IMG/VR virus record: IMGVR_UViG_3300034358_000008
Coordinates: 62,001 to 126,000 of that record
Length of the DNA stretch: 64,000 bases
Direction: 5' to 3' (one strand)
The notes below the pieces were generated by a model, which saw only the letters and a list, made by a program, of their open reading frames with translations, was not told the DNA's origin and made no database searches. The translations under genes and the position numbers were made by a program. Shown here piece after piece: positions 7,201 to 53,677 of this stretch. How positions within the stretch are numbered: position 1 is the stretch's first letter; each line of letters begins with the position of its first letter.

Positions 7201-8129
7201 CTCATTCTGTTGAACCGATCGACGAAATCAACGTACGTATCTACATGGTTGATCATACCGTCGATGTTATCTCGGTACATGGTAAGCAGGTTAAGGAATG
7301 GGCTGATATCAATCAACTCAATCAAATCTTCTCGCTTTCCCGACCAACGATGGAACGTGATATTCTAGAACGTACCTTCGCAATTCTTCCACGTATTTCG
7401 AACAAGGTTGATTGATATGTCCATGCAAGACGAAAGCATTATCTCCCACAAACAGGTCCTGGAAACTTTCAAACGTCGCAAGCAAGGCGAATGTCGACGC
7501 TTGTTAGAAACTGCCTTTGAAGAAGGCACTCGCCAGATGATGAAATACGTGAGTGCCTTGGCCTTCAACATCACGGTGAAATTCCCTTATGTACTCCCTG
7601 AGTATGTGAAGGAAGAACTCGTGAAAGATCTGAAGACTGGCGGCTGGGAGAACTACACTTTCGAAGAGTGCGGTAAGATCCTAACTGTTCGTCTGAATTC
7701 GGAGGAGGCAAGTAGTGTCGATCACGGCTGATATGGCAGAACTGATCCCGAAGCTGAGGATCTCTATCGCTAACCTTTCATGGAGTCCAGTGGTAACTGG
7801 CGGTGAACGTAAAGAGTGGCGGATTGGAATGCCTCGTCTTATGGACTGTTCGGAGATGTTCATGATTGTCGCACACCTAGGTCTTGCACCCGGCAGGTTT
7901 GCTTTTAAACCTACTGAAAAAGGTGAGTCTCATAACCTACACATTTACTCGGAACCAGCTAATGGCAAAGAAACTATCCAAGGGGAAGCGTAAGCACCTT
8001 ATTTCCTTGGTAAAGGAAAATATTCGTGCTGAGCGGGTTTTAAGGAATGCCATGATTGATGCTCGCCGCATCGTGCATGAGAACTTCCAGTTACGTCAGA
8101 ATCGCGCTTACATGTCTATCTACTGTTAA
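4230..8129 (+). other. Cluster of tightly packed small early hypothetical ORFs (4230-4436, 4521-4742, 4739-4993, 4986-5207, 5212-5403, 5403-5780, 5780-6031, 6048-6248, 6248-6511, 6523-6921, 6921-7415, 7408-7731, ~7715-7993, 7962-8129)
   Basis: Abutting or overlapping start/stop codons on one strand, ending at a terminator. Confidence 0.65.
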
Positions 8130-19699: not shown

Positions 19700-19726
19700 T
19701 ATTAACCCAACTTAAAGGATTTTAAA

Positions 19727-21797
19727 ATGGCACATAACACAGTACACTTGTTCATTCAACGTCTCAAGACCGTGTTGCGTGAACGGGATAAAAAGGACAT
19801 GGCTATGCTAGAGTCCCTTCGTGGTATCCGATTTGCTTACCAGGGTTTGTTAGACTACGATAGTGGACTGACGGATGAAAAAGTTCAAGAAGCTATCATG
19901 CAAGCTTTGTTCAAGAACCCTAACATTCTTAAGCTGGATCTCACTGGAGAACTTACACGTCTTTCCAACGAGATCACCATCGATGGCGTAGCTCTGGCTG
20001 GCTCGCCGCTACTCCCTGAAGATCGGATGATCCTAACCGAAGTTGTGCATCAGTGTGATCTGGCAATTAATACGCTTATTCGTTCTATTAACTAAAGGAA
20101 TTTGTAATGCTCGTCAAGTCCAAGAACTCCGTACTCGACATGTTCGTTGCGGTCCATCATCTGTACACCAACGTACAAAGCAACAGCACGAAAGAACTCG
20201 GTATCGAAGTAGTGGGTCATTCGTTGGTAATTGAAGATACGCCGTTGCGTACGTCTTTGCATTATCAGGTTGGTCGTGAATCGGATATCATCGTCATACA
20301 GAAGTATGCTCACGCTGATGACGATCACCAGCTGTTGGAAAAGAAGCAATTCAGTTTGCGAGATATGCCTGGTGTAGAAGACTACATCATCGAAGCTTTT
20401 GAACTCTAGCTAAAGGACTTTAAAATGGACATGCAAGACGATCTCGATAGAGAACCTACCGATGCCGAGGTTGTTCTTGGTGTCGTACTGGTTGTTGTTA
20501 TGGCTGTAGCGGTATGGAAGTTCCTCGATTGGGCTGCTGAATAATTACAGGATTTGTTATGAAAGCTAATACTGGTGACAAAGCGTTCTTCTTGTTCATG
20601 GCTGAGATGTTTCATCTCGACCCAGATGACAAATTGGAGCTGGAAGAACACAACTTCTTGCAACGAGCAATGTGCGTAACTCATCTGGAAACCCGGCGTT
20701 CTTTTACAGTGCATCGTCGGGTGTATGGCTGTGAGTTCGACTACATCAATGGTAACGGTAACGTTACAGAACAAATCATCGACGATCCCATTGTAGCTGC
20801 TGAACGTGCAATGGCTTTCCTCAATCGTACAACCGATCAAATCTAAAGGACGTTCCAATGAACCCGAATGCAATTCCAAAAGAAGCCCATCACGATATCA
20901 TCGAAGACGATAACTACATTCCGCCTGGGATGATCCTCTCCAATACCGATCGGAAGAAGATGCTGGCGCGTGAACACAACCGGGCTTACAACGCCGGTGA
21001 ACTCACCCGGAAAACTGATCTGGTGGACATCGTGCGTGGTGCAGTTAGCCATGCACAGCACTCGCTCGGTCTGCCTGTTACCCAATCTGTACTCAGTAAA
21101 AACCGTTAATCTCATTGGCTATTAAAGGAATTTAATCATGGAAGCTACAGTATCCAAATCTGCTCTGGCTGGCTTTGCTGGTATCAACCTCGACATCTTC
21201 TCCCGTGCGTTCAGGGAGTGCGGTATCGGTGGTCGTTTCTCCAAGTTCCACCTGCTACAGTTCGGGCAATGGTTTCGGCTGATGGAACATGACGTCGAAG
21301 CTAACCTGCGTCTGGGGTTTGTGGTCCATAGCGAAATCAACCGGGACCTGATGGAAGAAATCGATTCCATTAAAGCACTGGCGTTCGGGAAGCAATTCCC
21401 TGAATGGACTACCTATCTGCATACGGCTCAAAAGGTCATTGCCAAGATCGTTCGTCCCGGTGGTCCAGGTAACAAATATTCCACGACTACAGAATCCCCT
21501 GACAGCCGTTACTTCATTCATCCGATCACCCGGAACCTGTTCGTCGCCAACCGGATGTACATTCTGGAGATCAGTCCAGTTGTGGGTCCTGCTCCATACG
21601 TCAGTACTTCAGCAGCATTCGCTTATCTGAAAACACGTAATTCGACTGTTGGTGAAAACGATGTGGTTGAAGTATTCACTGAGTACGATGACGTGATTGT
21701 TGTAATCACCGATAAGGTATCAGGTGGTGTGACTACACACGAGTCTGGTGTAAATGCAGCAACCTTCGAACTGATGTACGGGGAAGCAGTTGAATGA
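19727..21797 (+). other. Early hypothetical ORFs (19727-20095, 20107-20409, 20559-20846, 20858-21109, 21138-21797)
   Basis: Most are preceded by a TAAAGGA RBS. Confidence 0.7.
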
Positions 21798-22171
21798 AGT
21801 TGGAAGTACAGGACGTTCCTTACATTGTGATAAAGCAATATCTGGAACAGCATGTCAAAGACGGCCTTCCTGAATGGGAGGCCGCTACTCTGGACATGGA
21901 CACCGTTACGATGTTGTTGACTAGGGGTGCATTCGCTCGAGAGCGTTCAGCTTGGGTAGTAGCATTGGAAGGACATGTGGTAGGTTATGCAGTCGTCGAT
22001 AACAAGATGAAATGTCTGGATCTATTACACCTTTCTCCTGAAGTCAGGGGTAAGGGTCTGAGTAAGTGGTTCCTCCAACACCTCGACATCAAGAATGTCG
22101 TTGTAGACATCCGTAACAAAGTTGCCCTAGCTCTTTACAAGGGTTTGGGTTATGAAATTGAATACGCTTAA
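21794..22171 (+). CDS. GNAT-family acetyltransferase
   Basis: Acetyl-CoA motif A LHLSPEVRGKGLS and motif B NKVALALYKGLGY. Confidence 0.8.
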   Translation: MKLEVQDVPYIVIKQYLEQHVKDGLPEWEAATLDMDTVTMLLTRGAFARERSAWVVALEGHVVGYAVVDNKMKCLDLLHLSPEVRGKGLSKWFLQHLDIKNVVVDIRNKVALALYKGLGYEIEYA

Positions 22172-22182
22172 AGGAATTTGAA

Positions 22183-23732
22183 ATGTTAAGATTCATGCCG
22201 TCGCCTGTGTTTCGCTTCAACGAGCAGTTATTGGTGTTGATGACCTATGAAGGCGGTCGTAACGTGGACCCACGCAAACGGGTGTTCGTGAACTCGATTG
22301 AGGACGGGCTAGCCTTTCACACCATGGCGCGTTTTCATGAGGTCACTATCCGACTTATTGAGAGTGGTATTGCTCGGGTTATTTACACCGACAACGCCGC
22401 CCGCGATGCAGTCATTGTTCATAAAGACTACGACCGGAAAGACATTCAGGAAATCGCCGAGGATATCGTCGGTTATCTGGAAGATCGTTTTGATCCAGCT
22501 GCTACTGAAGAGGTGGTGTAATGGGCAAGATCATTCTGCGTGGTATGACGAGTGCAATCAATGATGTTCTGGAAGAAGTGAATATTCTACTGGAACCCCG
22601 TGACTACAATCTGACCAGTTACTTCATCGGTAACAGCATCAGCTTTATCCGCGTCGGTATGATCCGTACCGTTCAACTCCGTTCTCATTCCGGGCACCGG
22701 GTAATGGTTACTCTCAACCTGCCTTCTATGGAACTGAAAATCCCATTCGATAAACCTACCGGTCTTAAGGAAGCTGCGATTTATATCGCGGATAGTTTCC
22801 TGCCACGCATACTGACTCTACCTGAGCGTGACGCCATTTACGAGGAGCGTTGTGAACGGATGGAGCAGGAAGCGATCAAGAACGAAGTGATGTATCCACA
22901 CGTAATGCGTCTTCTGCGGATGCCGGGTGAAACGAACGACGATCGTCACAAGGCTCTGGACTTCCGTGGCGTTCCTCGCTTCGGCCAAGAAATCAATACT
23001 CAAGAGGTTTAAATAATCATGGCACTGAATATTAGTGGTTCCGTTGTAATGGCTGAAGTAATGGCATTCAATGACCGCCTTACTAAAGCAGCTAAATCCG
23101 TAGACATCAGTGGTATGGATGTTTACCACACCATCAACACGAACATCGGTAACCAGTGTCTGGCTTATTCTTTGGATAAGCGCCGGGTTGAAGTAAGTGT
23201 GCAACATACTGACATGATGTTGACTTACTATCTCGATCGCGTTCAGGTGTTGGATTCTACATTCCCGCAACGTGAGATGGATGCCCAGGTAAATGGTGCA
23301 TTGCGCTGGTTGTTGGGTATGCCGATTTGCCTTGATCCATTGCCGCAAGAAACCATCCGCATCGAAAGTCCAGAAGACGGTAAAGACTACAGCACTGTAG
23401 ATCTGGTTGTTCAGATCAACTCCAGTTTCGAAGTCAGTAAGCTGTACGCTGAAGTGAAAGAGAAAGGCTGGGTCTATCAGCAGGATATGGGTGGCCCATT
23501 GAAAATGGTTGGTACTATTGCCAAACATCAGCTTTGGGTAATGCCTCAAATTCACACCATCAACGGTGTGAAGGTTTTGTACATTCAACCGACCAGTGCT
23601 TTCGTTCACTGGGATATGGTTGAGGAATGGGTTAAGCAACGTGTGCCTGAAGACACTCCAATGTTGAGTGAGCCAGGGCGCATGATCTGTGAAATCCGTG
23701 ACATCGCTGACAGCCGTAAAGAAGCCGCGTAA
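22183..23732 (+). other. Hypothetical ORFs 22183-22521, 22521-23012, 23019-23732
   Basis: RBSs and coupled stops/starts. Confidence 0.7.
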
Positions 23733-23818: not shown

Positions 23819-24634
23819 ATGAGTTGTTGCAACCCTAGAGGAGTCCCAGATTCAGACATTCCGTTTGAACATCTAGGATGTCCTTGTGACACTTGGTCTC
23901 ACCTGAAAGATATGTTCGTCTATTTAAAAGATGAACGTGCTGGTGGAGTACCATGCAAACCTGAACAATTCAAAGTTCAGTGGACCGGTATCGATGCAAT
24001 GACTTATATGTTCGTTGTGACCGATAACATTACTGGCGAGATAATCGAATACAGCGTGACTAAGGAATTCACCAAGGAATCTCCTGAGCAAGCGTTTGAG
24101 CGCGATTGGCGCTTCAGAGAACTCGTGTATAACCGTGGCGTTAATCGTGCCATGGAGGACCTCCTAGAGGCCATGGAAGAAACGAATACGACTACATTGT
24201 ACAAGCTGTCCCGTGTACCAATGAAGTCACATGTAATTCACAAACCAATACAAGAAGATCTGGGGGTTATCGTATTCCAAACCGATTACCTACCAACATT
24301 CCGTCATGCTGAACCGATGACGAAAGATCAATGGAATGATTTCTATAGCGACATGCCTATCCAACTCCCCGATATCGTTTCGAAAGTGGCCTATGGTACG
24401 GATGTACTGTTGAAGCGCTTCCGTAAGATCGGGGTTAAGTTCCTTCGCATCGAACACGAAGAACTAGAAGATCTGAAACGGTTCACGATTGTAGGGGTAG
24501 CCTACCGTGACCACTCCACTGATACTGAGGTACGCATCCGCTATCAGGAGATGGATTTGGATAACCCAATCCTTCGCGCATACCACACGTACTTTACTAC
24601 GAAAGGACCACAGAATGGCTTTTTCAATTGCTGA
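23819..24634 (+). CDS. Hypothetical protein with Cys-rich N-terminus
   Basis: GAGGT RBS before MSCCNP. Confidence 0.65.
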   Translation: MSCCNPRGVPDSDIPFEHLGCPCDTWSHLKDMFVYLKDERAGGVPCKPEQFKVQWTGIDAMTYMFVVTDNITGEIIEYSVTKEFTKESPEQAFERDWRFRELVYNRGVNRAMEDLLEAMEETNTTTLYKLSRVPMKSHVIHKPIQEDLGVIVFQTDYLPTFRHAEPMTKDQWNDFYSDMPIQLPDIVSKVAYGTDVLLKRFRKIGVKFLRIEHEELEDLKRFTIVGVAYRDHSTDTEVRIRYQEMDLDNPILRAYHTYFTTKGPQNGFFNC

Positions 24635-24974
24635 CAAATTCGAGTATGACCTAGCTGCTGTAGCTACTGCTAAAATGCTTCCCTTGACTGTAATGAAGCG
24701 TTTGGTTATGAAGCTATTTAACATGGCTCCGTTTGCTACGATCCCAGACAAGATCTTCTTTGTTGAAGAATCTAAAGCATTTACTCCAGTCGTCAACGAC
24801 AAAGGTGAAACCCTTGATACAGTACGTACACAACGTTTGCTGTTGAATGGGGAAGACTCCGTTATTATCGGTTTGCGTCCAGGTGAAGGTACAGATGCCG
24901 CTTCGGTGACGACCTATATCTTCAAAGCTCAACCCGGTGTGTATGACTTGAGTGTGTGGCTCCCCGCAGCGTAA
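24615..24974 (+). CDS. Hypothetical protein
   Basis: AAGGA RBS before MAFSIA. Confidence 0.6.
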   Translation: MAFSIADKFEYDLAAVATAKMLPLTVMKRLVMKLFNMAPFATIPDKIFFVEESKAFTPVVNDKGETLDTVRTQRLLLNGEDSVIIGLRPGEGTDAASVTTYIFKAQPGVYDLSVWLPAA

Positions 24975-24977
24975 TAA

Positions 24978-25010
24978 TAGCCCCTACCTTCGGGTAGGGG
25001 TTTATGCCGT
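24978..25010 (+). terminator. Intrinsic terminator
   Basis: CCCTACC-TTCG-GGTAGGG. Confidence 0.8.
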
Positions 25011-25012
25011 TC

Positions 25013-25047
25013 AATACAATTTATTTCAAATTTATATCATGGTTGGG
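25013..25047 (+). promoter_or_regulatory. Early promoter
   Basis: AATACAA-N13-TATATCAT. Confidence 0.7.
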
Positions 25048-25070
25048 TAATCTTGATCAACGAGGCTAAC

Positions 25071-25385
25071 ATGAAGGTAGGTCAGAATGTAAAAGATAAA
25101 TCTTACCTAGGGTATCGAGAAGGCCTTCTGTATGGACACGATATGGTTATCCACCATTTGATTTCTAGTCGTAAGTGCGCCTTACATTACCGTGATAAAC
25201 GTGCAGTTGAGTGCGGTCCTTATATCGGTGAGTCATTCCGGGAAGCCGATCGTGCAAACGGGTTGTCTAAATTCGTCCGTGAGAGTAATACGTGTAGCGA
25301 TGTCGAACTCAGATATGTATCCGATGCTAAAGCTAATGCTCATACACGTGGCAGACATGAACTAATAGACCTAGGTAGGAATTAA
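25071..25385 (+). CDS. Hypothetical protein, RxRxE paralog family
   Basis: YLGYR near the N-terminus; AKANAHTRGRHE near the C-terminus. Confidence 0.6.
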   Translation: MKVGQNVKDKSYLGYREGLLYGHDMVIHHLISSRKCALHYRDKRAVECGPYIGESFREADRANGLSKFVRESNTCSDVELRYVSDAKANAHTRGRHELIDLGRN

Positions 25386-25386
25386 C

Positions 25387-25650
25387 ATGGTCGAAAAGAT
25401 CAGACTCTACATGGGTGTGCGTAGTGGCGTTATCTGGTACAGCGATAGTGAGCAACGTAAAAACGGTGGGTCACGGGGACTAGATAAAGTCTACGGATGG
25501 CGTGGACTTGAACACGCAAATCGTGAAACTGCATCAGACGACTACTACGTTAACGCTAGTAGACGAGAACGATTTTACGAGGGAGTTGATCAAAATCAAG
25601 CTCGACGAAATGGCCCCCATCGCGATAGACAGGAATGTGAATTCTCATGA
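25387..25650 (+). CDS. Hypothetical protein, RxRxE paralog family
   Basis: YMGVR...ARRNGPHRDRQE. Confidence 0.6.
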   Translation: MVEKIRLYMGVRSGVIWYSDSEQRKNGGSRGLDKVYGWRGLEHANRETASDDYYVNASRRERFYEGVDQNQARRNGPHRDRQECEFS

Positions 25651-25850
25651 TTAGTAAAGGTAAATTCCGACATCTGCGTGAGTTGTATGGTTACAATGAT
25701 TTCGTGATGTATAAAGATCTTAAGACTGGTTTCTCCACAGGTTATCATCGTGGGAAGGTCTATCACAACATGTATCCGATTAGCGGTGGTGGTCCAGCAT
25801 TCGACTGCACCGGTGTAAACGTAACTCTTAATTATCGAGTAGAGGTGTAA
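25647..25850 (+). CDS. Hypothetical protein, SKGK-leader family
   Basis: MISKGKFRHL. Confidence 0.6.
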   Translation: MISKGKFRHLRELYGYNDFVMYKDLKTGFSTGYHRGKVYHNMYPISGGGPAFDCTGVNVTLNYRVEV

Positions 25851-25851
25851 C

Positions 25852-26067
25852 ATGGCTAAGCGTAATAACTTCAAACGTATCCGTAAGATTGCTGACATCA
25901 CTGAACACAACCGCAAGTATGCTTTGCTTCAGGCTGAACAGAATAGTCCTGAAGCTCTGGAACATAAGGTCAGTGAGTTACATGGTGCAATGCGTATCCT
26001 TCCAGCTGAGTCTCCACCAAAACAACCTGCACCTTCGCTGGGTGAACTCTTCAGCTTCTGCAAGTAA
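25852..26067 (+). CDS. Hypothetical protein
   Basis: GAGGT RBS. Confidence 0.6.
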   Translation: MAKRNNFKRIRKIADITEHNRKYALLQAEQNSPEALEHKVSELHGAMRILPAESPPKQPAPSLGELFSFCK

Positions 26068-26077
26068 GGATTGAACC

Positions 26078-26266
26078 ATGTTCTGGATAATCTTGGGTAT
26101 CATTTGTCTGACATGCGGTATCCTTCTCGCAACGAGTACGTTTGTATTAAGTAGTTCGAATAACAACTTCAGTACGAAAGATCGGATCGAACTGTATACC
26201 CTTTCGCTGCTGCTTTATGTCGGGGGCATCTATGGCATCATCAGTAACGTCTGTCCGGGGACTTAA
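26078..26266 (+). CDS. Small membrane protein with 2 TM segments
   Basis: Two hydrophobic stretches; AAGGA RBS. Confidence 0.65.
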   Translation: MFWIILGIICLTCGILLATSTFVLSSSNNNFSTKDRIELYTLSLLLYVGGIYGIISNVCPGT

Positions 26267-26615
26267 CAAAGGGAATAGACGGTATAAGAACCGTTGCTAT
26301 GAGCAACCGCGTGTTGCCTCTAACGGCATGGGTTGTGAGTGGACACATAACTACTTCCGTGATGAATGGACCTCGCGATTAGATCCACCCGATTCCTCTC
26401 GACGTACTGAAGCTGATGGCCATGAGGAAACTCCTGAGGCTCACCGGACCGGAGTGGATTTCTGGGGTAGGGCAGGTCTACGTGATGGTCAGGGTGCCTG
26501 TCTATTCATAGGTGCGTTTGAGGTTAGCGCTATACGCGATAACGATTGGCACCGTAAACGTTCTGAAGATTGCATTAACCCACCTGACGATGATGAGGAT
26601 TGGATAGATGATTAG
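26217..26615 (+). CDS. Hypothetical protein, RxRxE paralog family (start uncertain)
   Basis: AIRDNDWHRKRSE motif. Confidence 0.5.
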   Translation: MSGASMASSVTSVRGLNKGNRRYKNRCYEQPRVASNGMGCEWTHNYFRDEWTSRLDPPDSSRRTEADGHEETPEAHRTGVDFWGRAGLRDGQGACLFIGAFEVSAIRDNDWHRKRSEDCINPPDDDEDWIDD

Positions 26616-26877
26616 CAAAGGTAAGCGTAGGTTTCTGGTTCGACTTAACCTCCTGACGGTGTTGTGCGCTCAGCACCGGAAAGATGGTCAGATCGATTTA
26701 TTTGGTTGGGCTAAGTTGGCAGCTTTGAAACCTCGGTTGCGCTATCGGACTACTACCCCTAGAAAACCTTGGGTAATGCCAACGCTGGCTACACCAGAAA
26801 CGCATGCAAAACTCAGAGAGATCCAGAACAACATAATGGCGAGGTACCGATCTAATGTCGAAAATATCCAAGGGTAA
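26608..26877 (+). CDS. Hypothetical protein, SKGK-leader family
   Basis: MISKGKRRFL. Confidence 0.6.
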   Translation: MISKGKRRFLVRLNLLTVLCAQHRKDGQIDLFGWAKLAALKPRLRYRTTTPRKPWVMPTLATPETHAKLREIQNNIMARYRSNVENIQG

Positions 26878-27187
26878 GCGACGCTATCTATTACGGATGT
26901 ATCGTAGTTGGGTAGAGCTTCGAAGGCTCCGTGAGATATTCGGTCACCCTATTCTCAATCATGAATTTTTGAGTATCATGAATAAACGCTGGGTCGATTT
27001 AATGAGTCAGTGGCGCATGAATAGTCAAAAGCTCCTTGATGGTCTGGGTGCACCGGAGTCGTATATGGTGGCTACTCTACCAATGCGTCGTCAACGTGTT
27101 ATCGAAATAAACAAGAGCACTGGGTTACCACGCGGTGGATTACCCATGGTTACGTTGTTCACCGAGAAAGGACCAGTCAATGACTAA
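26855..27187 (+). CDS. Hypothetical protein, SKGK-leader family
   Basis: MSKISKGKRRYL; GAGGT RBS. Confidence 0.6.
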   Translation: MSKISKGKRRYLLRMYRSWVELRRLREIFGHPILNHEFLSIMNKRWVDLMSQWRMNSQKLLDGLGAPESYMVATLPMRRQRVIEINKSTGLPRGGLPMVTLFTEKGPVND

Positions 27188-27392
27188 TCTTCCAGCAGTT
27201 ATCCCACCATCATTTCACATACCCCTGGTATCGCCATATGGATCGACTGCACAAATGGTCCGTAATACCATGGCTAGGGTGTATGCTGGTATTATGTTAA
27301 TGGGTGTGACTCCAGGGGTAGCTCCAGAAGACCTTCCAAAGCATCGTAAGCTCATTGAGGACGTTCTGCATGTCACGAGTAAGCAAGGGTAA
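27180..27392 (+). CDS. Hypothetical protein
   Basis: AAGGA RBS. Confidence 0.55.
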   Translation: MTNLPAVIPPSFHIPLVSPYGSTAQMVRNTMARVYAGIMLMGVTPGVAPEDLPKHRKLIEDVLHVTSKQG

Positions 27393-27960
27393 GATCAAGC
27401 ACCTATGGGCATTGTACGGCGTTTGGGATATTGTTAGTCACCATCGGTTGATGGATGAATATACTCAATTCATTGCCACGGCAAAGCGATGGGAAGCGCG
27501 GTTGCATGACCCTAAGGTGGTTTCTCGGATATCGCGGTTCAGGGATGCAGTGGATCAACGTCTGGTTGAACCAATGGTTCAACAGATCGCTACCAAAGGT
27601 TACTACGATGGTTGCCGTAAGTTGGATAGTGAGTTTGATTTAGAAGTGTTCATTGATATCAAACGGATGGAAAACCTAACGCACCTGACCTATTCCCGTG
27701 GGAAGCATCACCATCATTCCCTGAAAGATAAAGTTATTACTTACGACATAAAGCCCGATATCCTAGAGGCGATGTCAAAACCAGTCATACGTAAGTCAAC
27801 TATGTCTGGTGCGATTTATGCAGAAGGTAGCCTTGACCGTATAGCGCATCTCGACATTGCCGACACCTACCCTAAGACAATTACCGTGACCGATGAAGAA
27901 TGGCTTGAACGGGAGTTGTGGGTTATTCACGGGAGATGTGATGAGACGTCCTCAACGTAA
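27370..27960 (+). CDS. SKGK-leader mosaic protein with DnaB-like and PolB motif A-like fragments
   Basis: MSRVSKGKIKHL; KGYYDGCRKLDSEFDLEVFI...RGKH; LDIADTYP. Confidence 0.6.
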   Translation: MSRVSKGKIKHLWALYGVWDIVSHHRLMDEYTQFIATAKRWEARLHDPKVVSRISRFRDAVDQRLVEPMVQQIATKGYYDGCRKLDSEFDLEVFIDIKRMENLTHLTYSRGKHHHHSLKDKVITYDIKPDILEAMSKPVIRKSTMSGAIYAEGSLDRIAHLDIADTYPKTITVTDEEWLERELWVIHGRCDETSST

Positions 27961-28186
27961 AGACCTCTACTATGGTTTCAGGAGTCAGGACTATGCGATG
28001 AGACCTGAATATTTTTACGGTCGTCAGTTAAGGACCAGTAAACCTGAACGTGATTGTCAATACGATCTTGAACGCAATGACGTGTGTTACGATGAGGGAG
28101 ATGGACCTAGGCATTGGATGTCTTTAACCGTTGCTCGTGACAACCAGTGTCAGCGTGGTAGGCATGAAAACTTCTATGCTCCATAA
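27941..28186 (+). CDS. Hypothetical protein, RxRxE paralog family
   Basis: YYGFR...ARDNQCQRGRHE; GGGAG RBS. Confidence 0.6.
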   Translation: MRRPQRKDLYYGFRSQDYAMRPEYFYGRQLRTSKPERDCQYDLERNDVCYDEGDGPRHWMSLTVARDNQCQRGRHENFYAP

Positions 28187-28390
28187 AATGCGCGCCCGGC
28201 GCATAAGTAATTCTAGGTAAAGCAATTTACATCGATAAATTAGTTTATCTAAAGAGCTTTTGTAATTTGCTTTTTAGATAAATTACTTAGATATAAATAG
28301 TATATTATGAGAGGGGGCCTTGGGGGCCCTCGAATAATATTCCTTATTCTTAGTATAGCAAGAGCTATACGCATTATGCCCTATGGGAGT
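28187..28390. repeat. AT-rich intergenic region with nested inverted repeats
   Basis: TAAGTAATT/AATTACTTA, AGCAATTTACA/TGTAATTTGCT (imperfect), GATAAA/TTTATC, GTATAGC/GCTATAC and others. Confidence 0.7.
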
Positions 28391-28394
28391 TAAC

Positions 28395-30338
28395 ATGCAA
28401 CATTACTATCGCGTTAAGCGTGCCAATGGACTTGTGTCTACCTTACACACTTACTGTGACTGGGACAAAGTCATAGCGGAGTACGGAGATGATCTAATCG
28501 GGGAAATGAATGGTCGTGGAGTATTCCAACGCATCAATGTTCCATCTGCTATCCGTGGTCAAATCAATGAGCTATTACTTTCCATGAATGAAAATAACAT
28601 TCTTGAGGTTAATCAAAAGATCACTGAACTACATGACAGTGTGTTGAAGCGTGAAGAACCATTACCGGATTATCGATTCCATCAGTACTCCTTAATGCAG
28701 CTACAACAGGATTACTATAACGAGGTAATCATTCCATCCCTATATCCAGAGGTAAAATGCAAAGTGTGTGAATCCCCTATGTTGGAAAGTGTATTCCCTG
28801 ATCTGTTCTTCAAGTTAGACGCTATGAAAAATAAAGTACAAGCTGATCCTAAGGGTAATCCAGTACGTACCGATATACAACTGATCCTACCTGACTTCTT
28901 CAAGAATGTAGGTGGTCAAACAGTCGTTGATACCGATGCAGTCGATGAACGTAATCGTCGTATAGCAATGAGACGTACTGCTGATGCTGTATTCAGTGGT
29001 CATAAACCGGGAACTACTCCTGATCCAGTGATTGATAAACGAGTGGATGAATTCAGTGCTATGTTTGAAGCACAGTCTGTAACTACCCCTGAAGAAGGTG
29101 GTATTACTGTCGTCCTACCGTATAGCGGGATCGAACTAAATTTGAAAGCACCGACTCAAGAAGATATGTACGCTTCAACAACTACAACTTTTGAATTCCT
29201 TGATCGGATTGGCATTAACCTTTTCGGAGAAGAATGGAAGAACATGAGAACCCCTAGACCCGTGGAACTGTCTAAGACAATCGAACCAGTGGTTCAGAAG
29301 ACCGCTTACGAACTGTGGCTGGAAGATGGTAACGTGGGTGAGATCGAAGATTACATTAGCGAATGTGGTCGGTATCGACGGTCTCCTTCGCTTTACCCTG
29401 AAGACTTCAAAGAAACCGTTAAGTATTTCCATAAGCAAGGTGGCCACAGTGTGGTCATCCGTAAAGATAACTACGGTGGTTACGCGCTGAGTGTTTACCC
29501 AGCTAAGACTAAAGACACATGCAAACGGCCAGAAATTAAAGGGGTAATCCTTAAAGGTTCTAAACCCCCAATCCAAATTGATGATGGTGAAGTACGTTCC
29601 CATATCAAGAATTTCGTAGAAGCTCAATACGAACCACATCTTGCCGCACAGGTACTCGAGAAATTGGATACGATTGCTGAAGTAGAGAAGAAACCACTCG
29701 TGGCCATCCTGCCACCCCATCTGAGCCGTATCATCGATTCATTGAAGTTCGGTAAAGGTCACATCGAAGCTGCTGTTGCTATGCTCAAAGACATTCAGAG
29801 TAATAATCCTACAGTAGCAGAGTCCGGTGAATATGACCAAGTTAAGGTTGATACCGAATTCACTACTGGTTATGAAGCCGTCTTTGAAGAAATAGCTCGC
29901 GAAGAGCAGGTAAAAGTAGATGCCGCTTCAACTGTACCTTCCTTGGCCCAATACGACGCTGTCCTTGAGCAGCTTACATGGGAAGCCGAACGTCGCATTC
30001 TGATCGGTACTAGCTCCTACGGTATTCAAGAACAGTTCCTTCGTTTCCTGAAACGTTGTGATGAAGAACAATTGAATACAGCTACACCATCGGCTTACGA
30101 TCGTGAACACTTCGACAAGATCTATAAAACTAACCGTGACAGTATCGGTTACATGTTGGCTACGGTGTTGACACCACATCTGGAGAACGCTGCTCATCGT
30201 CGAGAGTACATGGTCGATGGTACCGAGAACAATGTGCTCCGCGTATCACGTATTTGCCATGGTCGTAAAGGTGCTTCGTATCGTCCATTGGTAACCATTC
30301 GGTTTGTCAAAGGTTTCTTCAATATCGAAATGCATTAA
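28395..30338 (+). CDS. Large mosaic protein with chimallin-like, tail-fibre-like and DNA-polymerase-like segments
   Basis: About 650 aa; GGGAG RBS; motifs detailed in findings. Confidence 0.65.
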   Translation: MQHYYRVKRANGLVSTLHTYCDWDKVIAEYGDDLIGEMNGRGVFQRINVPSAIRGQINELLLSMNENNILEVNQKITELHDSVLKREEPLPDYRFHQYSLMQLQQDYYNEVIIPSLYPEVKCKVCESPMLESVFPDLFFKLDAMKNKVQADPKGNPVRTDIQLILPDFFKNVGGQTVVDTDAVDERNRRIAMRRTADAVFSGHKPGTTPDPVIDKRVDEFSAMFEAQSVTTPEEGGITVVLPYSGIELNLKAPTQEDMYASTTTTFEFLDRIGINLFGEEWKNMRTPRPVELSKTIEPVVQKTAYELWLEDGNVGEIEDYISECGRYRRSPSLYPEDFKETVKYFHKQGGHSVVIRKDNYGGYALSVYPAKTKDTCKRPEIKGVILKGSKPPIQIDDGEVRSHIKNFVEAQYEPHLAAQVLEKLDTIAEVEKKPLVAILPPHLSRIIDSLKFGKGHIEAAVAMLKDIQSNNPTVAESGEYDQVKVDTEFTTGYEAVFEEIAREEQVKVDAASTVPSLAQYDAVLEQLTWEAERRILIGTSSYGIQEQFLRFLKRCDEEQLNTATPSAYDREHFDKIYKTNRDSIGYMLATVLTPHLENAAHRREYMVDGTENNVLRVSRICHGRKGASYRPLVTIRFVKGFFNIEMH

Positions 30339-31610: not shown

Positions 31611-32600
31611 TTGGAGCTTTACTTGATGACCCCTTACGATTTTGAAAAACCAACTGGCCCAGTAAAAACATGTTTGATCTTTGCCGGTGGTGCTGGTCTT
31701 AACGTAGCAACCCATTTGGTGGACCTGCCTAACGTCCACTGTATTGATACCTGTGACAAGAACCTGGTTGATGCACACAAGAAGACCAATGTGTTCCTGA
31801 CCAAGGGTACGCGTGGTGCCGGTAAGAACCGTAAATACATCTTGCCTCTGATCCGTCCTCAATTGCCAGACATCATGGCGACTATCCCAGATGCAGACTT
31901 CTACATTCTCTGCTATTCGTTGGGTGGTGGTTCGGGTTCGACTCTTGCTCCATTGATTACCAACCAGCTGGCTCAACGTGGTGCTTCGTTTGTAAGCTTC
32001 GTAATCGGTGCAACTGAATCTCCTGAGGTTCTGCAAAACGACACTGATACCATGAAGTCGCTTGAAGCGATTGCTATGCGTATGAAGCTGCCAGTCGTTG
32101 TGAACTACACCCCTAACGTAAATGGTCTCACTTTCGATGCCATTAACCGCGGTGTTGCAGAGAACATCCGTCGTGTGGTTTGCCTGACTAATGGTAACCA
32201 TGGTCGCTTGGACGTACATGACGTATCCAACTGGGTACGCTTCACTGATAAACATACGCAACTGATGCCGCAGGTATGTGAACTGCATATCGAGACCAGC
32301 CGTAAAGATGCTGAAGGTATCCCTGAACCCATCGCTACAGCTAGTCTGTATCTGGATGAGTCCAAGGAATTCGCTTTCGGTAACCCTGTAGCGCGCACTG
32401 TAGGTATTATGAAAGCAGATGATACCGATGTGACGGATGATCAGATGCACTTCGTGATCAACTCCGTAGGCGTCGTAGAGATCATGAAAGGTATTGCTGA
32501 TACCCGCACCGAACAAGTCCGTAAGCAAGCAATGTTCGTACAACGTAACCCGCTGCTCGATCCAGACGACAACATCGATGACGATGGCATGGTAGTCTAA
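31611..32600 (+). CDS. phuZ: Phage tubulin PhuZ
   Basis: FAGGAG loop, GAGKNR, tubulin signature SLGGGSGS, LDVHD, acidic C-terminal tail. Confidence 0.92.
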   Translation: MELYLMTPYDFEKPTGPVKTCLIFAGGAGLNVATHLVDLPNVHCIDTCDKNLVDAHKKTNVFLTKGTRGAGKNRKYILPLIRPQLPDIMATIPDADFYILCYSLGGGSGSTLAPLITNQLAQRGASFVSFVIGATESPEVLQNDTDTMKSLEAIAMRMKLPVVVNYTPNVNGLTFDAINRGVAENIRRVVCLTNGNHGRLDVHDVSNWVRFTDKHTQLMPQVCELHIETSRKDAEGIPEPIATASLYLDESKEFAFGNPVARTVGIMKADDTDVTDDQMHFVINSVGVVEIMKGIADTRTEQVRKQAMFVQRNPLLDPDDNIDDDGMVV

Positions 32601-32637
32601 ACATAAACGCCCTACCTTCGGGTAGGGCTTTATTCCG
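32601..32637 (+). terminator. Intrinsic terminator
   Basis: GCCCTACC-TTCG-GGTAGGGC. Confidence 0.8.
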
Positions 32638-32649
32638 TTAGGAGTTAGT

Positions 32650-51778: not shown

Positions 51779-53677
51779 ATGATTCGTGACAAAGATACCG
51801 CTGCTACTCAAACCCCAGCCGCAGCAGTTCAACCAGCTCCAGCTTATCAAGCACCACAACAATCGCAGGCGACGCAAATGGAACAACCACAAGTGCAACA
51901 AACCCAATTCGCTGGTCGTGACCTGAACTCGAACTTCGAGCGTTCCGGTAAGACCCAAGGTGGCGACGCTCGTTCGAGTGAAGCACTGCAACTCTTCAAC
52001 CGTTTGAAAGAACAAGCTGTTGCATCCCAGGATCTGAAGGACGACTTCACCATCCTGCGTTTCGACCGTGACCAGAACCAAGTCGGTTGGTCTTCGCTGA
52101 TCATCGCTAAGCAAGCTACCATCAACGGTAAGCCACTGATCGTGGTTCGTCCACTGATCATGCCTAACGCTGCGATCGAACTGCCAGCCCGTAAGGTCAC
52201 CCTGCAAAACGGCATGCATCAAGAAATCATCGAGACCGAAGTTTCGGTTGGTGACGTATTCAGCAAGAAGTATCACGGTAAGCTGGTAGCTTTCGTTCAG
52301 GCATCCCTGAGCAAGCCAAACGCTGAAGTGGTTCTGGCTGGTGCATTCCCAATCCCTGCTGATCTGGTCCTGAAGGATTCCGAACTGCAACTGCGTTCGC
52401 TGTTGATCAAATCGGTTAACGCCTGTGAAGATCACCTGCAACGTCGTAGCGGTGAGAAGCCGTTCACCATCGGCATGCTGAAAGGCAACGATGAAACTCT
52501 GGCAGCCAAGATCGATACTCGTGATCTGACTGTAACCGATACTCTGGGTAACCCGATCCGTTCGGACGTGGTTGTAGGCATGCAGCGTGTTCGCCGTCAA
52601 GGTCAACAACAAGAGAACGAGTTCTACGAGACTGACGTCAAGTTGAACCAAGTATCCATGTTCACCAACCTGGAATATCAGCAACAAGCTCAGCAGAACA
52701 CCATGTTCGGTGCTGGTCAACAAGTTGCTCAACCAACCCCACCATGCACCGCAGCAGTGGTAATCACTGACGTACGTAACGCTGATGGCATTCAGGCTAA
52801 CACTCCTGAAATGTACTGGCTGTCGCTGTCCAACGCATACCGTGCAACTCACGGTCACGCTTGGGCTCGTCCATTCCTGCCACAAACTGGTAAGGTAAAA
52901 GACCTGCGTGACATCGGTGCTCTGGGCTGGTTGTCTCAGCTGCAAAACAAGATCGACACCAAGGCTGCTTCGTTCGACGACGCACAGTTCGGCATGCTGA
53001 CTCTGAGCATGATCAAACAACAGCCAGTGTTCCAGATCGACCTCAACCGTCTGGGTGAGAACGGTCCGATCGATGGCATGCTGTTGGACGCTGCTGGTGG
53101 TGAGAACCAACAGAAAGCAGTAGCAACTGTAGTTCGTCAGGTAACCAACCTGCTGGGTGTTGACTTCGGTAAGTTCTTCGACTACACCACTCAACCGATT
53201 CTGGTTAAGACTGGTCAGACTATCGACCTGGGTCACTACCTCGATGAAGATGGTGAGAAGCGCGACCGTCGTGAACTGGATAACCTGGGTGCCCTCAACG
53301 CATCGGAAGGTAACCTGAACGAATGGTGGGCTTACTACGGTTCGCAACAGAACACCAACATCCACCCGGATCAGCGTACCAAGCAGTCGCGTAACTTCGA
53401 CCGTCAGTACCTGGGTAGCACTGTTACGTACACCGGTAAAGCCGAACGCTGCACCTTCAACCCTAAGTTCATCGAAGCACTGGACGCAGCAATCGTTGCT
53501 GTTGGTCTGAGCGTAACCATGGACAATACTTCGGTATTGAACTCCGGTCAACGCTTCACCGGTAACTCGGTGATCAACCAGTTCCAAGTTGGTGGCACTG
53601 CACAAGTACAACAGTACGGTGGTCAGCAACAAGGCTACGGTCCTCAGTACAACGCTGGTGTTGGTAGCTTCTACTAA
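51779..53677 (+). CDS. chmA: Chimallin, phage nuclear shell protein
   Basis: 632 aa; Q/P/A-rich flexible N-terminus and G/Q/Y-rich C-tail; strong codon bias; immediately upstream of the nvRNAP beta' gene as in phiKZ gp54/gp55. Confidence 0.85.
   Translation: MIRDKDTAATQTPAAAVQPAPAYQAPQQSQATQMEQPQVQQTQFAGRDLNSNFERSGKTQGGDARSSEALQLFNRLKEQAVASQDLKDDFTILRFDRDQNQVGWSSLIIAKQATINGKPLIVVRPLIMPNAAIELPARKVTLQNGMHQEIIETEVSVGDVFSKKYHGKLVAFVQASLSKPNAEVVLAGAFPIPADLVLKDSELQLRSLLIKSVNACEDHLQRRSGEKPFTIGMLKGNDETLAAKIDTRDLTVTDTLGNPIRSDVVVGMQRVRRQGQQQENEFYETDVKLNQVSMFTNLEYQQQAQQNTMFGAGQQVAQPTPPCTAAVVITDVRNADGIQANTPEMYWLSLSNAYRATHGHAWARPFLPQTGKVKDLRDIGALGWLSQLQNKIDTKAASFDDAQFGMLTLSMIKQQPVFQIDLNRLGENGPIDGMLLDAAGGENQQKAVATVVRQVTNLLGVDFGKFFDYTTQPILVKTGQTIDLGHYLDEDGEKRDRRELDNLGALNASEGNLNEWWAYYGSQQNTNIHPDQRTKQSRNFDRQYLGSTVTYTGKAERCTFNPKFIEALDAAIVAVGLSVTMDNTSVLNSGQRFTGNSVINQFQVGGTAQVQQYGGQQQGYGPQYNAGVGSFY

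What the first reader, a model, noticed from the sequence alone, without database searches (positions are those of the whole stretch)
25647..27420. Shared N-terminal 'SKGK' leader on otherwise unrelated proteins
Five ORFs start with [ILV]SKGKx[RK][HFY]L and then diverge: MISKGKFRHL (25647), MISKGKRRFL (26608), MSKISKGKRRYL (26855), MSRVSKGKIKHL (27370) and distant MAKKLSKGKRKHL (7962). Codons differ between copies. A portable basic leader on diverse cargos suggests a targeting or docking tag (phage-nucleus import, or ribosome/RNA binding) or a reusable translation-start module used to express captured fragments.
Basis: partly seen in the sequence, partly recalled or inferred. Interest (0 to 1): 0.65.

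Follow-up and report, generated by a model that had tools for sequence, protein, structure and literature searches.

The report
Shared SKGK start on swappable phage genes
A nucleus-forming jumbo phage from peat has five small genes that all begin with the same short S-K-G-K…L peptide and are otherwise unrelated. Related phages swap, delete and duplicate the gene bodies exactly at this shared start, so it is a real, protein-level portable module whose partner is still unknown.

Summary
The motif [ST]KG[KR]xx[HFYW]L occurs exactly five times in the six-frame translation of the whole 325-kb genome. Each copy lies 2-5 residues after an ATG, at the coordinates given (0.23 expected by chance). The genome is a chimallivirus: it encodes a nuclear shell protein and PhuZ.

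Four carriers (families A-D) sit in one tandem array; the fifth (E) is a looser relative. Across 31 distinct relatives, S, K, G, K and L are invariant, although Ser uses four codons from both codon boxes and Leu uses all six. Selection therefore acts on the peptide. Beyond the first 13-26 residues (44 for B versus C), family profiles show no similarity.

The genes are real (dN/dS 0.15-0.39) but highly mosaic. Recombination breakpoints between related phages fall in or beside the leaders. One body is swapped as a cassette, and one gene is missing at a leader-leader joint.

Family D carries a 64-residue fragment of the phage's own DnaB-like helicase. Upstream genes end inside the leader.

Best reading: a lineage-specific gene family defined by a basic cap plus the start of an amphipathic helix. 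This module probably docks onto a common partner, and its DNA serves as the joint for cassette exchange. The closest analogue is the T4 internal-protein capsid-targeting sequence. The function is untested.

The parts
25647..25850 (+). Family A gene (67 aa); leader is the first 10 codons (25647-25676). The start overlaps the stop of the upstream ORF (ATGA).
   Evidence: orthologues in L004-L006 and a distant one in L033; dN/dS 0.19-0.35
26608..26877 (+). Family B gene (89 aa); leader 26608-26637. The body behaves as an exchangeable cassette.
   Evidence: L006 switches from L004-type to G000-type sequence inside this leader and switches back at the next leader. The gene is absent in L007.
26855..27187 (+). 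Family C gene (110 aa); leader 26855-26890. It overlaps the end of B by 23 nt. The C-terminus is conserved.
   Evidence: The AF2 model has helix 6-28 and helix 36-64 at mean pLDDT 60.
27370..27960 (+). Family D gene (196 aa); leader 27370-27405.
   Evidence: Nine other members in the database begin with the same leader.
27568..27756 (+). Captured fragment of a DnaB-like helicase inside D (residues 67-129).
   Evidence: PF20307 positions 265-328 of 356, E 1.6e-14; phrog_3213; 51% identity over 49 residues to the genome's full-length helicase at G000 191235-192296
7962..8129 (+). Family E gene (55 aa), the looser, distant carrier. The Gly of the motif is not kept in orthologues. The C-terminal residues are conserved in three genomes.
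26328..26615 (+). Upstream ORF whose TAG stop (26613-26615) lies inside the B leader (ATGATTAG).
   Evidence: the same arrangement is seen in L004-L006
27180..27392 (+). Upstream ORF whose TAA stop (27390-27392) lies inside the Gly-Lys codons (GGTAA) of the D leader; 23-nt overlap.
   Evidence: called as a gene in L006 and L007
24981..25000 (.). GC-rich hairpin followed by T-rich sequence. It is the likely 5' boundary of the transcription unit that holds the array.
   Evidence: consensus scan only
28191..28203 (.). GC-rich hairpin at the 3' end of the array.
   Evidence: consensus scan only

Best explanation
The SKGK leader is the only conserved part of a lineage-specific family of small, fast-evolving accessory proteins in Viktualia-like nucleus-forming jumbo phages. 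It is a module of about 12-25 residues: a basic cap (S-K-G-K-x-[KRQ]) followed by the first turns of an amphipathic helix ([YHF]-L-x-x-[LVM]-[YF]-x-x-[W/L]). Shown: it is translated and held constant by selection on the peptide. The bodies behind it are unrelated at the detection limit. Its coding DNA is the place where alleles and paralogues recombine, so gene bodies are swapped, lost or gained behind a constant start. One body is a captured fragment of the phage's replicative helicase. Upstream genes terminate inside the leader, which fits coupled translation. Inferred: the module works as a common docking helix. It would bring different cargo bodies to one partner or one place in the infected cell, much as the T4 capsid-targeting sequence does for unrelated internal proteins. 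The partner is unknown.
For: There are exactly five copies in the genome, all N-terminal, far above chance. In 31 distinct N-termini from at least seven phage genomes or contigs, S, K, G, K and L(+8) are 100% invariant. Ser uses AGC, AGT, TCC and TCT, and Leu uses all six codons. Positions 7, 11, 12 and 15 are hydrophobic or aromatic with helical spacing. Each start has its own Shine-Dalgarno-like purine run read directly from the sequences. Profile comparison gives probabilities below 2% without the leader and 36-95% over 13-26 columns (44 for B versus C) with it. The genes are real: dN/dS is 0.15-0.39. Their dS between G000 and L004 is 1.4-2.0, against 0.18 for the gene next door, which indicates allele replacement. 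In L006 the B body is G000-type while both flanks are L004-type; one switch lies inside the B leader and the other at the C start. L004 and L005 are 95-100% identical up to the B leader, about 50% identical between the B and D leaders, and similar again after the D leader. In L007 gene B is missing; the joint is the upstream gene plus a B-type leader fused to the C body, with the crossover in AARGGTAAGCG. Copy number varies by genome: 1 in G002, 2 in Viktualia and in L033, and 4-5 in G000 and G001. Helicase fragment in D. Upstream stops inside the leader. The AF2 model of C starts a helix at residue 6. For T4, the literature describes diverse internal proteins that share only a capsid-targeting sequence (PMC3012670; PMC7411985).
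Against: No partner, localisation or expression data exist. The source is a peat metagenome with no RNA runs. The structure models are weak (mean pLDDT 60 for C and 35 for D), so 'amphipathic helix' rests on sequence periodicity and a low-confidence model. Recombination breakpoints are expected in any conserved stretch flanked by diverged sequence, so their position does not show that the leader exists for recombination. Family profiles contain only 4-8 sequences, so very remote homology of the bodies cannot be excluded. A second Viktualia carrier (V2) is colinear with D at two short segments, so at least some 'different cargos' are degraded paralogues. The fifth family does not keep the Gly.
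Confidence: 0.5

Rival explanations
1. Ordinary tandem paralogues. One ancestral gene (D-like) duplicated, and the bodies diverged beyond recognition. The N-terminal helix is simply the most constrained part of a common fold or function, not a portable tag.
For: All four strict carriers lie in one tandem array. The most distant genome has only D, so D may be ancestral. V2 in Viktualia is colinear with D at the leader and at a second short motif. A versus D aligns over 26 columns and B versus C over 44, more than the bare motif.
Against: No similarity is detected once the leader is removed (probabilities below 2%). Lengths range from 52 to 285 aa. D contains a helicase fragment that the other families lack. 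Leader types move between orthologues, and bodies are exchanged at leaders.
Confidence: 0.25
2. A translation-level module. The Lys-rich start (S-K-x after Met) raises initiation or early elongation, and the embedded stops (TGA and TAG in ATGATTAG, TAA in GGTAA) couple each gene to the one upstream. Any body placed behind it would then be expressed.
For: SKX tags, including X = G encoded by GGT, placed directly after Met raised protein yield in E. coli independently of codons (PMC10192921). Upstream genes end at +1, +5 or +20 of the leader in nearly all cases. Gly is GGT in 23 of 24 copies.
Against: SKGK lies 2-5 residues from Met, not directly after it, in every copy. Conservation continues to an invariant Leu at +8 and aromatic or hydrophobic positions up to +15, which a start-codon context effect does not need. 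GGT is already 64% of Gly codons in this genome, so the GGT bias is weak evidence. The family D gene of G002 (L028) and V2 keep the leader without any long overlap with an upstream gene. Each gene has its own SD-like run.
Confidence: 0.12
3. A linear targeting signal in the strict sense: packaging into the capsid for injection (T4 CTS-like), or import into or attachment to the phage nucleus.
For: The pattern is the same as for T4 internal proteins: small, diverse, fast-evolving proteins sharing only an N-terminal stretch (PMC3012670; PMC7411985). The phage makes a nucleus (chimallin and PhuZ), and a helicase-fragment protein would be expected to act where replication occurs.
Against: No conserved prohead-protease site ([LI]xE or AxE) follows the leader (read from the alignments). 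Propeptides known in giant phages are 111-130 residues long (PMC7411985). Known chimallivirus cargo is reported to be recognised through surface residues, not a terminal signal (PMC12908238).
Confidence: 0.13

Closest known systems
T4-type capsid targeting sequence (CTS) of internal proteins IPI-III and Alt
   Same: A short N-terminal stretch (about 10-20 aa) is the only thing shared by small, diverse, fast-evolving phage proteins (PMC3012670, PMC7411985). From my own knowledge (Repoila et al. 1994, not retrieved here), the T-even internal-protein loci are also polymorphic, with exchange at conserved 5' sequences.
   Different: No protease cleavage motif follows the SKGK leader. The leader runs straight into a helix of the body. 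There is no evidence that the carriers are in virions. The sequences are unrelated. Giant-phage propeptides are much longer.
SKIK / SKX translation-enhancing N-terminal tags (engineered, E. coli)
   Same: A Ser-Lys-x start with Lys-rich early codons, and an effect that does not depend on the codons used (PMC10192921).
   Different: Those tags act directly after Met and are 3-4 residues long. Here SKGK is 2-5 residues from Met, and the conserved module extends 12-25 residues with an invariant Leu and aromatic positions.
Polymorphic toxin or cassette-type gene families (constant N-terminal part, variable C-terminal part exchanged by recombination)
   Same: A constant N-terminal module, unrelated C-terminal bodies, and recombination at the boundary that produces new combinations (concept as in PMC3482391, seen).
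   Different: The proteins are tiny (52-285 aa) and the constant part is only about 20 residues. No toxin or immunity domains were detected. They are encoded by a lytic jumbo phage.
Divergent DnaB-like helicase, PF20307 / phrog_3213 (family D only)
   Same: Residues 67-129 of D match positions 265-328 of the family model and are 51% identical over 49 residues to the phage's own helicase.
   Different: Only about 64 of 356 model positions are present. The N-terminal and Walker parts are absent, so D cannot be a helicase. A complete helicase gene exists elsewhere in the genome.

Membership tests
T4-type capsid targeting sequence | Short N-terminal consensus shared by otherwise unrelated proteins | tested here: met
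T4-type capsid targeting sequence | Prohead-protease cleavage motif directly after the leader ([LI]xE in T4; AxE in SPN3US-type giant phages) | tested here: not met
   No conserved Glu-containing motif follows the leader in any family (alignments). Scattered [AGS]xE triplets in D are not conserved in the window's own copy.
T4-type capsid targeting sequence | Carriers present in the virion and injected | not testable with these tools
   The source is a metagenomic phage and no proteome is available.
Tat or Sec signal peptide | RRxFL-type n-region followed by an uncharged hydrophobic h-region and a cleavage site | tested here: not met
   Only B of G000 and L006 has RR plus a hydrophobic run. A, C, D and E, and the other B alleles, have charged residues throughout the first 30 positions.
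SKIK/SKX translation-enhancing tag | S/K/A-K-x placed immediately after the initiator Met | tested here: not met
   SKGK starts at residue 3-6. Only the C copy at 26855 also begins M-S-K.
SKIK/SKX translation-enhancing tag | Raises protein yield independently of codon choice | not testable with these tools
   Codon variation in the leader is compatible with this, but no expression data exist.
Chimallivirus nuclear-import cargo | Recognition by the PicA/Imp machinery through surface residues of the folded protein | not testable with these tools
   Literature only (PMC12908238). No localisation data exist.
Divergent DnaB-like helicase (PF20307), for the 27370 gene | Full RecA-type ATPase core (model positions 1-356) | tested here: not met
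   Only positions 265-328 match. The full-length gene lies elsewhere in the genome.
Ordinary paralogue family | Homology along the whole length | tested here: not met
   hhalign without the leader gives probabilities below 2% for all pairs. The profiles are shallow, so remote homology is not excluded. D and V2 share one extra short motif.

The most novel reading that the evidence does not exclude
The SKGK module is a genuine linear address tag in a nucleus-forming phage. In this reading, about 20 N-terminal residues are enough to deliver any body to one place (nuclear shell or interior, capsid, or early vesicle) or to one host or phage machine. The phage population uses the tag-coding DNA as a built-in joint to try out new cargo, including fragments of its own replication proteins.
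Probability: 0.2. Interest if true: 0.8.

Novelty: new variant of a known kind. Interest (0 to 1): 0.52.

Why it matters
Targeting in nucleus-forming phages is currently described as depending on folded surfaces, not on terminal signals. A short transferable leader shared by unrelated small proteins would be the first candidate linear tag in this group, and it could be tested with a handful of fusions in a cultured relative (Viktualia on Pseudomonas syringae). Apart from function, the locus shows clearly how a phage population shuffles gene bodies at a 20-30-nt conserved joint. It also shows a phage re-using a piece of its own helicase as a small protein. There is a practical point too: one gene caller cut the leader off two of the five genes, so such families are easy to miss in automatic annotation.

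Tried and rejected
Pfam and PHROGs gave nothing for A, B, C or E, and nothing in Pfam for the neighbouring small ORFs.

ESM Atlas look-alikes of C gave no family and only scores typical of chance. PDB profile searches with the C and D alignments gave nothing usable. I did not run fold searches because both models were of low confidence.

Complex prediction of D with the full-length helicase returned 'no answer'. It counts neither for nor against binding.

The DNA upstream of the five starts shares no motif, so there is no common promoter or RBS cassette.

I scanned IMG/VR for M-I-S-K-G-K-type starts. This found only this phage group plus two chance hits in short ORFs.

tblastn of the five proteins against the phage's own genome found a second-copy source only for D.

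The always-GGT Gly codon is not significant by itself, because GGT is 64% of Gly codons in this genome.

Split-intein C-fragment, Tat signal and arginine-rich RNA-binding-peptide readings were considered from memory. I dropped the first two because the defining residues are absent or not conserved across families, and the third because nothing here can test it.

Rfam found nothing above chance in 24000-29500.

No RNA runs hold this DNA.

I redid the step by extracting the same segments from the stored files. The large representative-protein search was not used, because a profile of about 20 residues cannot reach significance there.
Full report
What the window is. The window is bases 62001-126000 of a 324,912-bp virus record assembled from a peat metagenome. 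It encodes a nuclear shell protein (phrog_4795, E 1e-196, window 51779-53674). It also encodes a PhuZ-type tubulin (window 31611-32597), tail sheath, DNA polymerase and a split RNA polymerase subunit. It is therefore a nucleus-forming jumbo phage (chimallivirus). The nearest named relative is Pseudomonas phage Viktualia.

Checking the observation. All five ORFs are present at the stated starts. SKGK occurs five times in the six-frame translation of the window, each time 2-5 residues after an ATG. Genome-wide, the extended motif [ST]KG[KR]xx[HFYW]L occurs exactly five times. Simulated genomes gave a mean of 0.23 matches anywhere and none next to a Met. A profile of the first 20 residues scores the five at 24-39 bits, and the next best six-frame hit scores 9.5 bits. 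The DNA upstream of the starts is not conserved. Each start has its own purine-rich Shine-Dalgarno-like run (read).

Relatives. The same genes occur in a 321-kb IMG/VR phage (G001/L004). They also occur in three metagenome contigs (L005-L007), an 85-kb contig (L033), Viktualia and a 309-kb IMG/VR phage (G002). I call the families A (25647), B (26608), C (26855), D (27370) and E (7962). Copy number rises from one in G002 (D only), to two in Viktualia and L033, to four or five in G000 and G001. About 370 kb of helicase neighbourhoods from other chimalliviruses held no further copy. An IMG/VR-wide scan for the commonest DNA form found only this group plus two chance hits. In the 5.8-billion-protein collection the families are small: 7 hits for C, 11 for D and 3 for A.

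Selection is on the peptide. In 31 distinct N-termini, S, K, G, K and the Leu at +8 are invariant. Position 6 is K, R or Q and position 7 is Y, H or F. Positions 11, 12 and 15 are mostly L/V/M, Y/F and W/L. Across 24 DNA copies, Ser is encoded by AGC, AGT, TCC and TCT, and Leu by all six codons. This can only be maintained by selection on the amino acid. Gly is GGT in 23 of 24 copies, but GGT is already 64% of Gly codons in this genome, so I give that little weight. The hydrophobic spacing (7, 8, 11, 12, 15) fits an amphipathic helix. The AF2 model of C places a helix from residue 6 to 28 at pLDDT about 70, with mean pLDDT 60. The model of D is unusable.

Are the bodies related? Profile-profile comparison of the family alignments gives probabilities of 36-95% when the leader is included, over 13-26 columns (44 for B versus C). 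With the leader cut off, probabilities fall below 2%. The profiles are shallow, so very remote homology is not excluded. One extra carrier in Viktualia (V2, L029 5092-5463) is colinear with D at the leader and at one further short motif, so it is probably a D derivative. Family E keeps the basic pattern, but its orthologues have N or A instead of Gly. It is a looser member.

The bodies are real genes but mosaic. Pairwise dN/dS is 0.15-0.39 in all four array families. Between G000 and L004, the neighbouring conserved gene is 97% identical in protein with dS 0.18. The array genes are 43-60% identical with dS 1.4-2.0. That difference is too large for rate variation alone and points to replacement by diverged alleles.

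Sliding identity and breakpoint maps show where the replacements happened. L006 is 92-98% identical to L004 from about 25890 to the B start. It switches to G000-type sequence (82-93%) after codon 8 of the B leader. It switches back to L004-type (88-100%) at the C start. The B body has therefore been exchanged as a cassette between two leaders. L004 and L005 are 95-100% identical up to the B leader, about 50% identical from there to the D leader, and similar again afterwards. Another switch lies at the A leader.

In L007, gene B is absent. The joint consists of the gene that normally precedes B, a B-type leader and the C body, with the crossover in the shared AARGGTAAGCG. Leader subtypes (M-I- versus M-A-R-[IV]-) also move between orthologues. 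The leader-coding DNA is therefore where these phages recombine. Breakpoints are expected in any conserved island, so this shows what happens there, not why the leader is conserved.

Gene junctions. In nearly all copies the upstream gene terminates at or inside the leader: at TGA in ATGA or at TAATG (A), at TAG in ATGATTAG (B), and at TAA in GGTAA 20 nt past the ATG (C and D; 23-nt overlap). This fits termination-reinitiation coupling, but that is an inference. The family D gene of G002 (L028) and V2 keep the leader without such long overlaps. The array lies between two GC-rich hairpins (24981-25000 and 28191-28203).

Family D. Residues 67-129 match positions 265-328 of the divergent DnaB-like ATPase model (E 1.6e-14). 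They are 51% identical over 49 residues to the phage's complete helicase, which is encoded 100 kb away. D lacks the rest of the ATPase core, so it is a captured fragment and not a helicase. None of the other bodies has a detectable source elsewhere in the genome. In Viktualia the fragment ORF lacks the leader, and a 52-residue leader ORF with a C-type tail precedes it.

Interpretation. The descriptive part is well supported: this is a lineage-specific gene family defined only by a module of about 20 N-terminal residues, under peptide-level selection, with bodies exchanged at the module. The function is inferred. I favour a shared docking helix. The conserved part is a basic cap plus an amphipathic helix start. 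It is kept on bodies that share nothing else. The closest natural precedent is the T4 capsid-targeting sequence on diverse internal proteins (PMC3012670; PMC7411985).

It is not a member of that class as tested, because no protease site follows the leader, and giant-phage propeptides are 111-130 residues long. A nucleus-import tag is possible, but it runs against the current statement that cargo is recognised through surface residues rather than a terminal signal (PMC12908238). A translation-enhancing role has a precedent in SKX tags (PMC10192921). It does not explain the distance of SKGK from the Met or the conservation out to +15. Ordinary divergent paralogy remains a serious rival.

Limits. 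There are no expression, proteomic or localisation data. The structure models are weak. One complex prediction gave no answer (see Tried and rejected).

Noticed in passing
window 27568-27756 (inside the 27370 gene); full-length gene at G000 191235-192296 (L001 1480-3009, - strand): A small protein carries a 64-residue piece of the phage's own DnaB-like helicase, from the C-terminal part of the ATPase model. The family is conserved in related phages. It might act on the helicase ring, but this is untested.
   Followed up: partly
window 28263-28382 (intergenic, upstream of the 651-aa gene at 28383): This non-coding element is strongly conserved in all four complete genomes, including distant ones (84.8% identity to Viktualia where the flanking genes do not match at DNA level). 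It has an AT-rich box, then a GC-rich hairpin, then a conserved AT-rich run. It is probably a phage promoter with a 5' leader structure. Rfam gave no hit.
   Followed up: partly
window 26855 and 27370: The gene caller behind the public record started these two genes at internal Met codons (M15 and M28), which cuts off the leader (database proteins P0006 and P0013). Other assemblies call them with the leader.
   Followed up: yes
window 26863-26877, 27378-27392, 7979-7993: Because of the overlaps, three upstream proteins end in similar tails (-I-Q-G, -K-Q-G, -I-Q-G-E-A) that are dictated by the leader read in another frame.
   Followed up: partly
L028 5691-7586 (G002) and L003 1414-2784 (Viktualia), upstream of the conserved Cys-rich anchor gene; the equivalent window region is about 19700-23000: Several consecutive ORFs of about 100-110 aa look like another tandem paralogue family of unknown function.
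   Followed up: no
window 24973-25010 and about 32600-32640: A hairpin-containing sequence of about 38 nt recurs after two different genes (seen as a second blastn match). It is likely a repeated terminator.
   Followed up: no
L003 5822-6303 (Viktualia): In Viktualia the leader sits on a 52-aa ORF that keeps only the C-family tail. The helicase-fragment ORF that follows has no leader. This looks like a rearranged or decaying version of the array.
   Followed up: partly
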